A stretch of DNA of 64,000 nucleotides, taken from NCBI RefSeq assembly GCF_963853765.1, contig NC_088860.1, forward strand, positions 992,001 to 1,056,000, given 5' to 3'. Position numbers and translations under genes: made by a program. Shown here piece after piece: positions 27,152 through 54,031 of the stretch (positions are counted from its first letter, which is position 1; each line of letters opens with the position of its first letter). The stretch is from Magallana gigas. Taxonomy: Eukaryota. Under the pieces are notes generated by a model that made no database searches, had not been told where the DNA came from, and saw nothing but the letters and a program-made list of their open reading frames with translations.

Positions 27152-27647
27152 AATTAAACTCTGACGTAGGAATACATACGACTGCAAAAAATATCTCTGC
27201 CTATTTTTAAGGTATTTATAGATACGTTTCCTTGAAAATTAATGGTTCAGCATACAGTACACGGAATTTATCTGTTATTTTCAAGATCTAAGTCTTGTCA
27301 GCGGTGATGATTTGTGCTTAGGTCCAAACACTGTTTCACTTTCGGTTTGCCAGAGTAACTGCATATGAGAGTTGATTAAAATCAAATCACAATAAAATGA
27401 TTTAGATGGTAAAAATTTCTAACTGGCTGGAACAGGATCAGAACTCATTAAGTGAAAATTTGTTACAAAATGAATTTAGCAAAAACAAGTAAATAAATGA
27501 AGATTATAAGCAATAAAATGTCAGAAACGAAACTATCTATTTTGTCGAGGATCCTTTTCACAGTGGGTTTTTAACACACATCGTCCTAAAATATAAATCG
27601 CAGAAGTTTTGACAACGCATAATGAGGCTATGCTATGACATAGACCC

Positions 27648-27658
27648 AAACCGAAAGT
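27648..27658 (+). promoter_or_regulatory. IRF-element-like AAACCGAAAGT upstream of HSPA12-A
   Basis: Context CCCAAACCGAAAGTAGCTA; a second AANNGAAA site (GAAACGAAACT) lies at 27524-27534. Confidence 0.4.
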
Positions 27659-27716
27659 AGCTAAATGGCGGCTTAGAATGATCAATCTACAGTGAAATAT
27701 TCCGTTTTGTTTCAGA

Positions 27717-30304
27717 ATGGACGATTACTTCAGTCCTTGGCCCGTTGTGTGCGCCATTGACTTTGGGACGACTTACAGTGGCTATGCTTATTCCATGCGA
27801 CCAGACTATGAAAGGAACCCATTAAATATTGAGTGCAATCCGTCATGGTCAAACGAGGAAATGATGACACCAAAAACTCCGACCTGTATACTTTTTGATA
27901 AGTCGGAAAACTTCCATTCATTTGGGTACGAGGCAGAAAAGAAATATAGAAAGCTAGCTGAAAAAGCCCAAGAAAAACTAGAGGCTGACGAAGAAGACGA
28001 TAGCGATGATAGTGATGATAGCGACAATGAAAAAGACGAAGATAAAATTGAAGAAGACAACGTTACTGAGTGGCTTTATTTCAGAAGATTTAAAATGAAG
28101 CTGTATCAAGACGATATGGTAGGTATATTAGTGTTTTCATTTGCCAGGTAACTCTGCGCTATACTTACTAATCCATTATATTGGATATAGTTTACTATGC
28201 ACATTTATTTAAATAAGTTATAACACATGGATCTTTTAAAACAGAAAAATTCCAAGTATTTTATAATCGTTTTTCATTCCCTCTTATCAAATATTGAGCC
28301 AAAGGACATACTTAATACATTTGGGAACCATATCGTTTATGTTTTCTGGAATTATTTGTAATATTGTTTGGTATACACACATTGATAAGGAAAACAAATT
28401 ATTGTATTTTATTACAGATGGCGAAGCAAAAATTAAAGAAATTGAAACTAAGCGCAGAAAATGGGAAGAAACTTCCAGCTTTGAAAGTATTTTCAGAAGC
28501 AATTAAATATCTGAAAAACCACTTTGAAGCCTTACTGCTTAAAACAACAATAAGAGATGATTGTAAAGAAAGTTCATTGAATTCAGATACGTCACAAGAG
28601 CAACGTCATACCTCTGTGTCCACAAGAAAACAGGAACCACACTCTGAACGTTCTGATTCCAGTGTTGTGGATAGAAAAGACTCGTCCTGGTCGGACGACA
28701 TCTTGTGGGTCCTAACAGTTCCTGCAATTTGGTCTGACGAAGCGAAACAGTTCATGCGTGATGCTGCTATACAGGTTTTTTAAAACGTTATTTCAATGTC
28801 ACGTATTGTATAGTTAATGCGTTGTCTTGTTGTCAGTTTGTTGTTTTGGACATTCTTTTTTACTTTTTACATGATTTACTTTGGGTTGTATTCCGCTACC
28901 CTGATACTCTGACTTGACTTTTTAGGCTGGCATTAGAGACGACCATTTGGTACTGGCGCTGGAACCAGAGTCCGCAGCTCTGCTCTGTAAGCAGTTAGCA
29001 CTGACCAAAAAAGCAGTTGATATCAAGGTACAGATGTTTGAACCTGGCAGCAAGTTTATGGTCGTAGATTGTGGAGGTACGCCTAAATCGTATTTATTTC
29101 TATAATTATTAAAATTATTTTGACACTGAATGCAATGATAGCCTAAGATGTTGCCTTTTGATATTCAGGAGGAACAGTGGATGTGACGGCTTACAAAGTT
29201 GAAAACAACCAATCCCTACGAGAGTTGCATTGCGCATCTGGAGATGCAGTAGGGGGAACAAATGTGGACATGCTTTTTTTCAATCTTCTAAATGACATAT
29301 TTGGAAAAGACGTGGTGGAAAGATTTCAGAACAAATCACCGTCAGATTGGCATGAAATGATGAGAAGTTTTGAAGTTAAGAAACGGGGTATTGGGCTAAA
29401 AAATCCAAACGAAAAGGAGAAAGAACTAATAACTTTTTCAAATTTGGGTAGACTGATTGACGCATTTTCATATGTAAATGGACACAGTAAAAATGCTATT
29501 TCTAAACGGATACAAGAAATGGATTTAAAAAAGAAGATAAAATGTAACGGTCCAAAGATGCGTATTGATGAAACTTACTTAATTGAGACAGTTTTTGCTG
29601 GTCCAATCAAAGATATTGTGAAACACTTGAAAAATTTGTTCGCTGAGAAAGACGTAAAAGGTATCGATATAATATTGCTTGTCGGGGGATTCTCCGAATG
29701 TCCACTCCTGCAAGATGAAATTAAGAGGGAATTTCCAGAGAAAACAATTGTTAATCCGCGAGATGGAAGCATTGCCGTAATGAAGGGGGCAGTGTTGTTT
29801 GGACATAGCACTGAGATCATTGCTCAGAAAAGGATAGAACAGGGGCATCGTCTCCACGAAGTAGAAGAAGTCTCTGAATGCGTAGTTCGTAGGAGCAGGG
29901 CCTACTATGGCGTTGCAACAGATGTTCCTTTTGTTGATGATGAACATCTCCCAGTTTATAGGTATACCAACGAAGAAGGTTTATCTATGTGTTCAGACAT
30001 TTTTGATTGCCTGATAGAAAAAAATCAAGAGATGGAAATAGGAAAATCTGTTTTTGAAAAGACATTCAGAGCCTCTAGTACATGGGCGAACGTAGAAATT
30101 TATCGATCAGACAGGGAGGTACAATACTGCCATGAAGATGGCTGTCGAAACATTGGAAATATTAATGCCCATTATTCGGATGACTCCGGTGATAGGAGAT
30201 TATTTAAAATCCAGCTTTATTTTGGTTTCACAGAAAAAATAGCAATAGCAATGGACATGAGGACACAGAAAACCTGGAAGGCCAAACTCGACTGTCTTCT
30301 GTAG
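27717..30304 (+). CDS. HSPA12: Heat shock 70 kDa protein 12-like, copy A (~681 aa)
   Basis: Exons 27717-28118, 28418-28774, 28926-29076, 29169-30304 (2046 nt, in frame). Motifs VCAIDFGTTYSGYAY, KTPTCILF, WVLTVPAIW, LALEPESAA, VDCG|GGTVD, LLVGGFSEC, AVMKGAVLFG. Confidence 0.93.
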
Positions 30305-52310: not shown

Positions 52311-52748
52311 TATTATACCTCTAGTTATTTTTCAGTATATAAGAATTATTCGATATATTTTGCTGATTTGTTGAGAATCGCCGTAAACAGACTAATTCCT
52401 GCAGAACAGACTGATTCCCTCCAAAACGGTGCGTCAGTTCGAGGAACTGATACACCCCTATTGGGAACACTTAGTAATTTCTTTTAGCCAAAGATCTAGA
52501 AAAAGTACCAAAAAATAAAATCATGAATATTCATAACCGTATCATTTAATTCTAGTTGTAACGTCCTTTTGGATTGGCTATACGTATTCATCTTTTTCGT
52601 ATAGCATAACTTGCCTACGTCACAGTACATCGTGCGTGCAATTTAATTATATTTATTTTGACGTTATAACTTGTTGGATACACAAAGAATTATATTAATT
52701 TGAACCTTTCCTGATTGATTGTTTGTATCGATATAATAAAACAGTTTA

Positions 52749-53008
52749 AGTACACCATTGAGGGAGTCAGCAAGATTCCAGTTCCCCTCAACCTAGCCTA
52801 TTTTGTTCGGCTTCGCCTCCGGGAATAGACCTGCTCTCGGGGATCTGGCCCCGGGGCCATAAAACTTAGACTAGCTTACTTTTGATCTCAGTCTCACTTT
52901 TACAAAAGGATTATATAGTGGGAAAGTGAGACTCAGATCAAAAGCAACCTCGTCTAGGTTTTATGGCACTAGGGCCTGGAATGTTGCTGACTCCCTCAAT
53001 GGTATACT
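52749..53008. mobile_element. Fold-back MITE (TTAA-type) with nested internal inverted repeat
   Basis: TIR AGTAYACCATTGAGGGAGTCAGCAASATTCCAG, flanks TTTA/TTAA; second inverted pair at ~52855-52900 and ~52920-52970. Confidence 0.65.
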
Positions 53009-54019
53009 TTAATTGTATACTTTCTTCTGTAAAATATTATAAGTTTATAAAACTAAAGACGATGTACAAATACGCATCGTGTATTGTAACCTTGTTGTTT
53101 AATGTATAATCTATGATTTGAGCTGAGAATGTGTGCAGCATCAATGGTAAACTGTACTGTTGGAAAACAATTTCTTTTTACCAAGAATAATTTTTATGAA
53201 CTATGAATACCTTGATATTCTAGAAGATTTTGACGAGATTCACATTTTTTTTATTTTACCAAAATATTAAGCAGATGTAGTTGCAAAATTACACATCAGG
53301 AACCGCCCACAAGCACCTAACGTTATATATTTTCCTATAATAAAAAATATATACCCTCTACCTTTTAATACACAAGGAATACATCGCCACCATCTTGGAT
53401 TTATTTAATCTGTCACATCAGCTGAAAGTTTTGCATTAAACTAATCGTTAACTGTTTTTGCAATCCTCTCCATCTACCAATCGGCTCTTCAACATTTAAG
53501 CTTACAATCGATCTTAGATCATTCAGAGACTATAGGGGATTTTTTGAATTACAAATACTGAATTTTATGAATATTCTTTAAAACAATTTGGCAAGCTTGT
53601 TTTTCCAAATGATCAGATGTGTTGTACAGAAGTGTATTGCCTACCTTATAGTATCTAGATACCTCAATCTGAAATAAGTAGTTGCTAATAACCCTAACAT
53701 TATTGACGTTTAATTATACACCAGCAGTATAAATAATTCATACGCCTGAAGTGAAAAAATAATGAATATTTTGAAAATCAGTACAAGTTTTGTTTGGTAT
53801 ATATCTAAATGGATGAGAATTTTATTTCGTGTGGAATTAAATAGCGACAAGCGTACCAATAGAAATCGAGAACTTATATTGTGGGATTCGGAGATAAAAG
53901 GGGGATAATGCGTGTTTCAAAATTCATGTCAACCTTAACACACGTTGTCAATCAAGCGTATAGAGAACAGATAGCAACTGATATAAATACCGACTGTTAA
54001 AGTTACAAGATCCTTACTC

Positions 54020-54031
54020 GAAACCGAAACT
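54020..54031 (+). promoter_or_regulatory. ISRE GAAACCGAAACT upstream of HSPA12-C
   Basis: Matches the classical ISRE core ~48 bp before the ATG; positional homologues in copies A and B. Confidence 0.55.

What the first reader, a model, noticed from the sequence alone, without database searches (positions are those of the whole stretch)
27524..54031. IRF/ISRE motif kept at the homologous position upstream of all three HSPA12 genes
Seen: A CCCAAACCGAAAGTAGCTA (27645-27663), B CCCAAACTGAAAGTAGCTA (38635-38653), C CTCGAAACCGAAACTAGCTA (54017-54036), each ~45-60 bp before the ATG. Copy C's upstream DNA is otherwise not alignable by eye to A/B, so this short block looks selectively retained. No clear heat-shock element (nGAAnnTTCn array) was noticed there. 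Inference: these atypical HSP70s act as interferon-stimulated-like genes, not heat-shock genes.
Basis: partly seen in the sequence, partly recalled or inferred. Interest (0 to 1): 0.7.

Follow-up and report, generated by a model that had tools for sequence, protein, structure and literature searches.

The report
IRF-type motif heading oyster HSPA12 genes
A short interferon-response-like DNA word sits at the start of the transcript of many genes in the greatly expanded oyster HSPA12 (atypical Hsp70) family, here and in other oyster species, which suggests, without showing it, that antiviral IRF factors rather than heat shock control part of this family.

Summary
All three blocks are at the stated coordinates. 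They are the only sequence shared by the A/B and C upstream regions.

- **Same cluster:** the block recurs in two more cluster genes just outside the window.
- **Paralogues:** it is found in at least 14 independent HSPA12 lineages of this Pacific-oyster genome.
- **Other species:** it is present in Crassostrea angulata, two Saccostrea species and Pinctada.
- **Consensus:** yAAA(A/C)CGAAAGTA, which contains the IRF core AANNGAAA. Copies C and E read GAAACCGAAACT, identical to the core of the human ISG15 ISRE probe.
- **Enrichment:** the 12-mer occurs 30 times in 103 kb upstream of 114 HSPA12 start codons, against 0.26 expected. Nine are sense copies within 100 bp of the ATG.
- **Position:** assembled transcripts show the block at or just after the transcription start, inside the 5'UTR.
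- **Heat shock:** no heat-shock element lies within 750 bp of any of the 114 start codons.

The interferon-stimulated-like reading is only partly supported. Oyster IRFs activate mammalian ISRE reporters, and published tables show modest, sustained poly(I:C) and OsHV-1 induction of several HSPA12 genes. However, IRF binding is untested, two-half-site ISREs are not enriched, and the sense bias near the ATG also fits a family-specific promoter or 5'-leader element.

The parts
27524..27534 (+). Distal element of gene A, GAAACGAAACT (pentamer-spaced IRF-type repeat), 58 nt upstream of the TATA box, in untranscribed DNA
   Evidence: Contig depth is 0 in three RNA runs and 0.33 in X5 over 27508-27658.
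27592..27598 (+). TATAAAT box of gene A
   Evidence: It lies 50 nt upstream of the block.
27645..27663 (+). Proximal block of gene A, CCCAAACCGAAAGTAGCTA (core AAACCGAAAGT at 27648-27658), at the start of the mRNA
   Evidence: mRNA contig L031 begins at the base equivalent to 27647. Assembled contigs begin at 27659-27764, and none lies further upstream.
27717..30304 (+). HSPA12 gene A coding region: 4 exons (27717-28118, 28418-28774, 28926-29076, 29169-30304), intact 681 aa
   Evidence: Splice joints seen in 4 runs. Translation. HSPA12A-like homologues.
38527..38537 (+). Distal element of gene B, GAAACGAAACT
38635..38653 (+). Proximal block of gene B, CCCAAACTGAAAGTAGCTA
38695..43646 (+). HSPA12 gene B (start codon to end of the last-exon ORF; long first intron)
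53982..53988 (+). TATAAAT box of gene C, 38 nt upstream of the ISRE core
54017..54036 (+). Proximal block of gene C. The core GAAACCGAAACT (54020-54031) is a perfect two-half-site ISRE.
   Evidence: The last ~140 bp before the ATG are identical in C. angulata. The same 12-mer is in ISG15 ISRE probes.
54079..58748 (+). HSPA12 gene C (start codon to end of the last-exon ORF)
   Evidence: The orthologue P0007 is in C. angulata.
63716..63730 (+). AAAACGAAAGTAGCT in a tandemly duplicated copy of the promoter of gene D. The real start codon of D lies just past the window end, at window-equivalent 64432.
27333..27348 (-). AAACCGAAAGTGAAAC inside a ~650-bp high-copy dispersed repeat upstream of gene A. 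It belongs to the transposon, not to the conserved promoter.
   Evidence: 4211 first-look candidates. Very high contig depth.

Best explanation
The block is an ancient, selectively maintained cis-regulatory word of the oyster HSPA12 family, consensus yAAA(A/C)CGAAAGTA. It sits at or just after the transcription start of the gene. Most likely it is a DNA binding site for an interferon regulatory factor. The genome encodes four IRF genes, and oyster IRF2 and IRF8 activate mammalian ISRE reporters. On this reading, a subset of the ~90-115 HSPA12 paralogues, including A-E of this cluster, belongs to the dsRNA- and virus-induced IRF programme rather than to the HSF/heat-shock programme. Shown: the conservation, the enrichment, the position relative to transcripts, the match to the IRF core, and the absence of heat-shock elements. 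Inferred: that an IRF binds the word, and that binding drives induction.
For: Retention:
- The block is the only alignable upstream sequence between A and C, D or E.
- It is also present in D and E, outside the window.
- 20 paralogues in 14 lineages carry it in sense within 160 bp of the ATG, although their exon-1 peptides are only 38-50% identical to A.
- These paralogues fall at 10 or more separate places on the family tree.

Enrichment:
- The 12-mer AAAMCGAAAGTA occurs 30 times in 102,569 nt upstream of 114 start codons, against 0.26 expected from the genome-wide rate. Nine are sense copies within 100 bp, against 0.015 expected.
- Reversed and scrambled control words score 0.

Other species:
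- Saccostrea cucullata: 3 of 3 complete genes, at -29, about -55 and -21.
- S. echinata: at -126. Pinctada: two tandem copies. C. virginica: the variant GAAGTGAAAGTA at -112.
- C. angulata: orthologues identical.

IRF character:
- All copies fit AANNGAAA.
- Differences among A-E fall on the degenerate positions of the IRF-E consensus.
- Copies C and E match the ISG15 ISRE core.
- A and B add a second GAAACGAAACT in untranscribed promoter DNA.
- 19 antisense copies lie at -130 to -830, as expected of a DNA rather than an RNA element.
- The genome has four IRF genes. CgIRF2 and CgIRF8 activate human ISRE and IFN-beta reporters (PMC5557890).

Expression:
- In Lafont 2020 Table S5A, 7 HSPA12 rows in three sampled parts of the 'sustained poly(I:C)' group are up 0.3-1.5 log2, and most are also up after OsHV-1. 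They sit beside IFI44, SAMHD1, DHX58 and RNF213.
- No heat-shock element.
Against: - No binding or reporter data exist for this word.
- The conserved word is narrower than an ISRE: CG before GAAA and TA after GAAAGT are fixed. Strict GAAANNGAAAS is not enriched near paralogue start codons (4 of 114, the same as in distal bins).
- The proximal copies are strongly sense-biased (16 of 19) and lie in the 5'UTR or at the transcription start. Classical ISREs usually lie upstream of the start (general knowledge).
- Published induction of HSPA12 genes is several-fold weaker than that of canonical antiviral genes, and it cannot be assigned to motif-bearing paralogues.
- The 44 genome-wide hits sampled on chromosome C1 are mostly transposon-borne and show no association with gene starts. 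No non-HSPA12 regulon sharing the word could therefore be shown.
- No motif was seen near the single HSPA12 gene sampled from each of Mytilus, Pecten and Mercenaria.
Confidence: 0.5

Rival explanations
1. The word is a family-specific, positioned core-promoter or initiator-proximal element. A factor other than an IRF binds it, and it sets the start site or basal/tissue expression of HSPA12 genes. Its resemblance to an IRF site is coincidental.
For: - Sense copies concentrate within 100 bp of the ATG (11 of 18), and no antisense copy lies there.
- Transcript contigs of two paralogue types begin within the word (L031; L122/L123).
- TATA-like boxes lie 28-56 nt upstream of the word in many paralogues.
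- The word is usually preceded by a pyrimidine (13 of 14 lineages), as at an initiator.
- The fixed bases go beyond what IRFs are known to require.
Against: - In L005-type transcripts the word is at least 105 nt inside the 5'UTR.
- In Pinctada two copies sit 23 bp apart.
- Antisense copies are about 45-fold enriched at -130 to -830.
- The word is not associated with gene starts elsewhere in the genome.
- No non-IRF factor with this specificity is known to me.
Confidence: 0.25
2. The word acts in the mRNA as a linear 5'UTR motif, read by an RNA-binding protein to control translation or stability of HSPA12 mRNAs under stress.
For: - The word is transcribed in three paralogue types.
- It keeps sense orientation and lies 20-90 nt before the ATG.
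- In several paralogues it follows a possible splice acceptor.
Against: - No conserved RNA structure: consensus energy -0.77 kcal/mol and no covariation.
- The second A/B element lies in untranscribed DNA.
- 19 antisense copies upstream of HSPA12 genes cannot act in the sense mRNA.
- Changes among copies follow DNA IRF-E degeneracy.
Confidence: 0.12
3. The block is kept only by recent common descent or gene conversion among tandem copies and has no function.
For: A-B and C-E are recent duplicates with longer shared upstream stretches. Gene conversion among HSPA12 paralogues has been proposed (PMC11268181).
Against: The flanks are unalignable while 11-15 nt stay fixed. The word is present in paralogues on six chromosomes (C2, C4, C5, C7, C8 and C9) with 38-50% exon-1 identity. 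It is also present in Saccostrea and Pinctada. Enrichment is about 100-600-fold.
Confidence: 0.04

Closest known systems
Vertebrate ISRE / IRF-E, for example the human ISG15 ISRE (GGGAAACCGAAACTGAA)
   Same: Copies C and E carry the identical 12-mer GAAACCGAAACT. All copies contain AANNGAAA followed by G/C and T. They lie in the proximal region of the gene. Oyster IRFs drive such elements in reporter assays (PMC5557890).
   Different: Most HSPA12 copies have only one good GAAA half-site, with fixed CG and TA flanks. They lie at or after the transcription start with a sense bias. Neither binding nor inducibility has been shown.
PRDI-type IRF1/IRF2 site of the IFN-beta promoter (AAGTGAAAGT; general knowledge)
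   Same: GAAAGT core. The C. virginica variant GAAGTGAAAGTA and the transposon copy AAACCGAAAGTGAAAC read like PRDI repeats.
   Different: In the HSPA12 word a C, not a T, precedes GAAAGT. It is a single site, not a hexamer array.
IRF-driven Vago promoter in shrimp (PMC4602278, listed)
   Same: An invertebrate precedent for an IRF activating an antiviral gene through an ISRE-like promoter site.
   Different: That is one cytokine-like gene, whereas this is a word shared by dozens of paralogues of a chaperone-like family. I did not read that paper's site sequence.
Positioned promoter motifs such as Drosophila Motif 1/M1BP, DRE or the TCT initiator (general knowledge)
   Same: Orientation-locked, and within a few tens of nt of the transcription start in a defined gene set.
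   Different: Those motifs mark many unrelated genes. This word showed no link to gene starts outside HSPA12 in the chromosome C1 sample.
HSF/heat-shock-element promoters of inducible hsp70 genes
   Same: The protein belongs to the Hsp70 superfamily.
   Different: No array of three alternating nGAAn units lies within 600-750 bp. HSPA12 genes have introns and a different promoter architecture.

Membership tests
ISRE / IRF-binding element | Sequence fits AANNGAAA (IRF core) or GAAANNGAAA(G/C)(T/C) (two half-sites) | tested here: met
   All five cluster copies and all 14 lineage representatives fit AANNGAAAGT/CT. Only C and E fit the full two-half-site form.
ISRE / IRF-binding element | Lies in the proximal regulatory region of the gene it controls | tested here: inconclusive
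   The block is within about 0-45 nt downstream of the inferred start in A and at least 105 nt inside the 5'UTR in the L005 type. The distal A/B element is upstream of the TATA box. This is proximal, but mostly on the transcribed side.
ISRE / IRF-binding element | Bound by an IRF (or an ISGF3-like complex) | not testable with these tools
   Indirect only: four IRF genes in the genome, and CgIRF2/8 activate human ISRE reporters.
ISRE / IRF-binding element | Confers induction by virus, dsRNA or an interferon-like signal | not tested
   Family-level published data show modest, sustained poly(I:C) and OsHV-1 induction of several HSPA12 genes. These cannot be mapped to genes A-E or to motif status.
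ISRE / IRF-binding element | Works in either orientation | tested here: inconclusive
   Both orientations are enriched upstream of HSPA12 genes (18 sense, 19 antisense). Within 100 bp of the ATG, however, only sense copies occur.
Heat-shock element (HSF site) | At least three contiguous alternating nGAAn/nTTCn units near the promoter | tested here: not met
   None within 600 bp of A-E, even allowing one mismatch, apart from weak hits beyond -430. None within 750 bp of 114 paralogues.
HSPA12 subfamily of Hsp70 | Protein homologous to bivalve HSPA12A/B with an Hsp70-type ATPase domain | tested here: met
   [quoted passage not shown] The full 681-aa product is 84% identical to P0002 and 65% to P0007.
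General positioned core-promoter motif | Marks transcription starts of many unrelated genes | tested here: not met
   The 44 genome-wide hits on chromosome C1 lie mostly in at least 7 repeat families. Downstream ATG-ORFs number 8 in sense against 19 in the antisense control.

The most novel reading that the evidence does not exclude
The word is the ancestral regulatory switch of the pteriomorph (oyster and pearl-oyster) HSPA12 expansion. On this reading, a large share of these roughly 100 atypical Hsp70 genes form a lineage-specific, IRF-controlled antiviral effector family. That would be an invertebrate 'ISG family' with no vertebrate counterpart, read out through a transcription-start-embedded single-site IRF element.
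Probability: 0.3. Interest if true: 0.75.

Novelty: new variant of a known kind. Interest (0 to 1): 0.6.

Why it matters
The reason for the huge HSPA12 expansion in bivalves (89 of 113 Hsp70 genes in the Pacific oyster, PMC11268181) is an open question. It is usually attributed loosely to 'stress'.

A conserved, highly enriched IRF-type word at the 5' ends of many paralogues, and in other oyster genera, gives a concrete and testable regulatory hypothesis. It links the expansion to the oyster's interferon-like antiviral programme, which is relevant to OsHV-1 mortality and poly(I:C) priming.

It also supplies a native oyster candidate IRF site. Work so far has used mammalian ISRE reporters.

If the word turns out not to bind IRFs, it would still be a new family-specific promoter or leader element with unusually strong positional constraint.

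Tried and rejected
1. **Two-half-site ISRE enrichment.** I tested whether strict ISREs (GAAANNGAAAS) are enriched near all HSPA12 start codons. They are not; only the narrower word is.
2. **5'UTR intron.** I suspected a 5'UTR intron because A and B read tttcag|AATG. This is rejected: the mRNA contig L031 is contiguous through it.
3. **Head-to-head neighbours.** I proposed that the antisense copies belong to head-to-head HSPA12 neighbours. This is not supported: no HSPA12 exon signature and no long ORF lies downstream of any of the 19. They remain unexplained.
4. **General promoter element.** Rejected on 44 chromosome C1 hits, which are mostly transposons.
5. **Conserved RNA structure in the 5'UTR.** None found.
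6. **Other immune sites.** No kappaB or GAS sites in the A-E promoters, apart from one GAS-like site in A at -489.
7. **Steps that could not be run.**
   - A positive control for heat-shock elements on canonical hsp70 promoters.
   - A scan of oyster antiviral gene promoters (viperin, IFI44, ADAR, ZNFX1).
   - Raw reads: only assembled contigs were available, so no true 5' ends or expression levels could be obtained.
   - Mapping the CGI gene ids of Lafont 2020 to genes A-E.
8. **Literature.** Searches for HSPA12 together with ISRE, IRF or antiviral terms in molluscs found no paper describing this motif.
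Full report
**What is in the window**

The start codons are at 27717, 38695 and 54079.

The genome is 564 Mb in 29 contigs, and the window is C8:992001-1056000. Contig C8 is 51,133,819 bp long, the contig length recorded for an NCBI Magallana gigas protein. I therefore infer that this is the Pacific oyster.

[quoted passage not shown] RNA-run contigs give A four exons with GT..AG introns and an intact 681-aa product.

**Is the block more than chance or descent?**

- AAANNGAAASTAGCT with up to 1 mismatch occurs 5 times in the window against 0.39 expected, and 0 of 100 shuffles reach 5.
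- The five hits are A, B, C, a duplicated copy of the next gene's promoter (63716) and one 1-mismatch hit at 9787.
- Two further cluster genes just outside the window, D (L003) and E (L016), carry the block 52-55 nt before their ATG.
- In 500 bp upstream, the block is the only local similarity between A and C, D or E. A-B share 185 bp and C-E about 66 bp, and exon-1 DNA is 71-81% identical between those pairs.
- The C. angulata orthologue of C is identical for the last ~140 bp and then diverges. The orthologue of D also keeps its block.

**Family-wide test**

The first coding exon of A finds 116 HSPA12-type first exons in this genome. I collected 114 non-redundant upstream regions, 102,569 nt in total.

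- A strict two-half-site ISRE is not enriched near the ATG (4 genes, the same as in distal bins). No 3-unit heat-shock element lies within 750 bp of any of them.
- A narrower word is strikingly enriched. AAA[AC]CGAAAGT occurs 18 times in sense and 19 times in antisense, in 33 genes. Reversed and scrambled controls score 0.
- With the final A added, the count is 30 hits against 0.26 expected from the genome-wide rate. That rate rests on 1446 hits, against 680 for the reversed word.
- Nine sense copies lie within 100 bp of the ATG against 0.015 expected.
- Carriers sit on six chromosomes and their exon-1 peptides are only 38-50% identical to A.
- They form 14 lineages with unalignable flanks, with consensus yAAA(A/C)CGAAAGTA(g)(a).
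- They fall at 10 or more separate places on the family tree, including most basal branches.

**Other species**

| Species | Result |
|---|---|
| Saccostrea cucullata | All three complete genes of a tandem cluster have the word in sense at -29, about -55 and -21 |
| S. echinata | Word at -126 |
| Pinctada imbricata | Two copies 23 bp apart, ~1.1 kb upstream of the real ATG, which is itself preceded by a splice acceptor |
| C. virginica | PRDI-like variant GAAGTGAAAGTA at -112 |
| Mytilus, Pecten, Mercenaria | Nothing near the ATG in the one gene sampled from each |

**Position relative to the transcript**

- A public mRNA contig (L031, 84% protein identity to A) begins CAAACCGAAAGTAGC. It runs without interruption through 'tttcagAATG', so there is no 5'UTR intron.
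- In four runs the contig depth is zero (0.33 in X5) over 27508-27658. Contigs begin at 27659-27764, and one carries a sequencing adapter joined at 27668.
- With TATAAAT at 27592, the start of A is most likely between about 27620 and 27647. The block then forms the first bases of the 5'UTR.
- The distal GAAACGAAACT (27524) and the TATA box lie in untranscribed promoter DNA.
- A second paralogue type also has transcripts beginning at the word (L122/L123). A third carries it at least 105 nt inside the 5'UTR (L120/L121).
- Contigs cannot prove a start site, so this placement is supported but not demonstrated.

**What it most likely is**

- Every copy contains the IRF core AANNGAAA followed by G/C and T.
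- The differences among A-E fall on the degenerate positions of the IRF-E consensus.
- Copies C and E read GAAACCGAAACT, the core of the ISG15 ISRE probe that binds IRF1 and ISGF3.
- The genome has four IRF genes.
- CgIRF2 and CgIRF8 are induced by poly(I:C) and activate human ISRE and IFN-beta reporters (PMC5557890).
- Lafont et al. 2020 (PMC7064767) Table S5A lists 42 'heat shock 70 kDa 12A/B' rows.
- In three sampled parts of its 'sustained poly(I:C)' group I found seven such rows. All are up 0.3-1.5 log2 after poly(I:C), and most are also up after OsHV-1.
- These rows sit beside IFI44, SAMHD1, DHX58 and RNF213, which rise by 2-4 log2. Rows in other groups show small or no changes.
- The paper's main text does not discuss these HSPA12 genes.
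- Heat responses of MgHSP70 genes are heterogeneous and often peak late, at 24 h.

**Why I stop at about 50%**

- The word is narrower than an ISRE.
- Its proximal copies are sense-locked and transcribed.
- The published induction is modest and cannot be mapped to these genes.
- The 44 genome-wide hits I could inspect were mostly transposon copies with no link to gene starts.
- The region upstream of A itself holds a ~650-bp repeat with thousands of copies that carries AAACCGAAAGTGAAAC.

A family-specific start-site element is the main rival. A linear 5'UTR RNA motif remains possible. Against the RNA reading stand the 19 antisense upstream copies, the untranscribed second element in A and B, and the lack of any conserved RNA structure.

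**Earlier notes**

First-stage notes of this scan on other parts of the same genome also report IRF-like motifs at another HSPA12 cluster and at ZNFX1, ADAR2 and dispanin genes. I could not check them.

**Verdict**

Noticed in passing
window 63570-64000, continuing in L003 640-855 versus L003 1297-1515: The promoter of gene D plus the first ~20 nt of its coding sequence is tandemly duplicated about 660 bp upstream. D therefore has two copies of the AAAACGAAAGTAGCT block, and the upstream one is followed by unrelated sequence.
   Followed up: partly
window 26750-27400: A ~650-bp dispersed repeat lies here (4211 first-look candidates genome-wide; scored copies are 79-90% identical). Its contig depth in RNA runs is very high. 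It carries AAACCGAAAGTGAAAC on the minus strand at 27333-27348.
   Followed up: partly
upstream regions of 17 HSPA12 paralogues, for example L090 -238, L052 -488 and -736, L116 -537: Nineteen antisense copies of AAA[AC]CGAAAGT lie 130-830 bp upstream of HSPA12 start codons. None lies within 100 bp. On their own strand they are not followed by an HSPA12 exon or a long ORF. Possible explanations are divergent non-coding transcripts or upstream enhancer sites.
   Followed up: partly
L016 (G000:C8:1067660-1067842): Cluster gene E has an in-frame TAG in its first coding exon, so it is probably a pseudogene. It still keeps the perfect GAAACCGAAACTAGCTA block, although its TATA box has decayed to AGAAATA.
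   Followed up: no
window 4898 (-) and 5146-5157 (-): AACGAAAGTG and GAAAGTGAAAGT lie on the minus strand in the region where another first-stage note places an ISRE and a kappaB site ahead of an internal PI4K2 exon.
   Followed up: no
window 9760-9930: ETS-type sites (AACGGAAGTGA and ACCGGAAGTGAC) suggest a housekeeping-type promoter. The 1-mismatch hit AAACGGAAAGTAGAT at 9787 belongs to this region and is probably unrelated to the HSPA12 word.
   Followed up: no
window 48320-49831 (+): A 503-aa ORF with a B-box zinc finger (PF00643, E 4e-9) lies between HSPA12 genes B and C. It is a TRIM-like gene. No HSPA12-type word lies within 1.5 kb upstream of the ORF.
   Followed up: partly
L129 and L158 (G000:C1:1449394 and C1:14530509): Two 98.5% identical repeat copies carry AAAACGAAAGTAGAC immediately followed by a perfect kappaB site, GGGACTTTCC. 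No gene was found downstream.
   Followed up: partly
window 27706-27719, 38684-38697, 54068-54081, and L003/L016 1490-1503: A second small conserved block, TTTCnnAATG, directly precedes the start codon in all five cluster genes and in L031.
   Followed up: no
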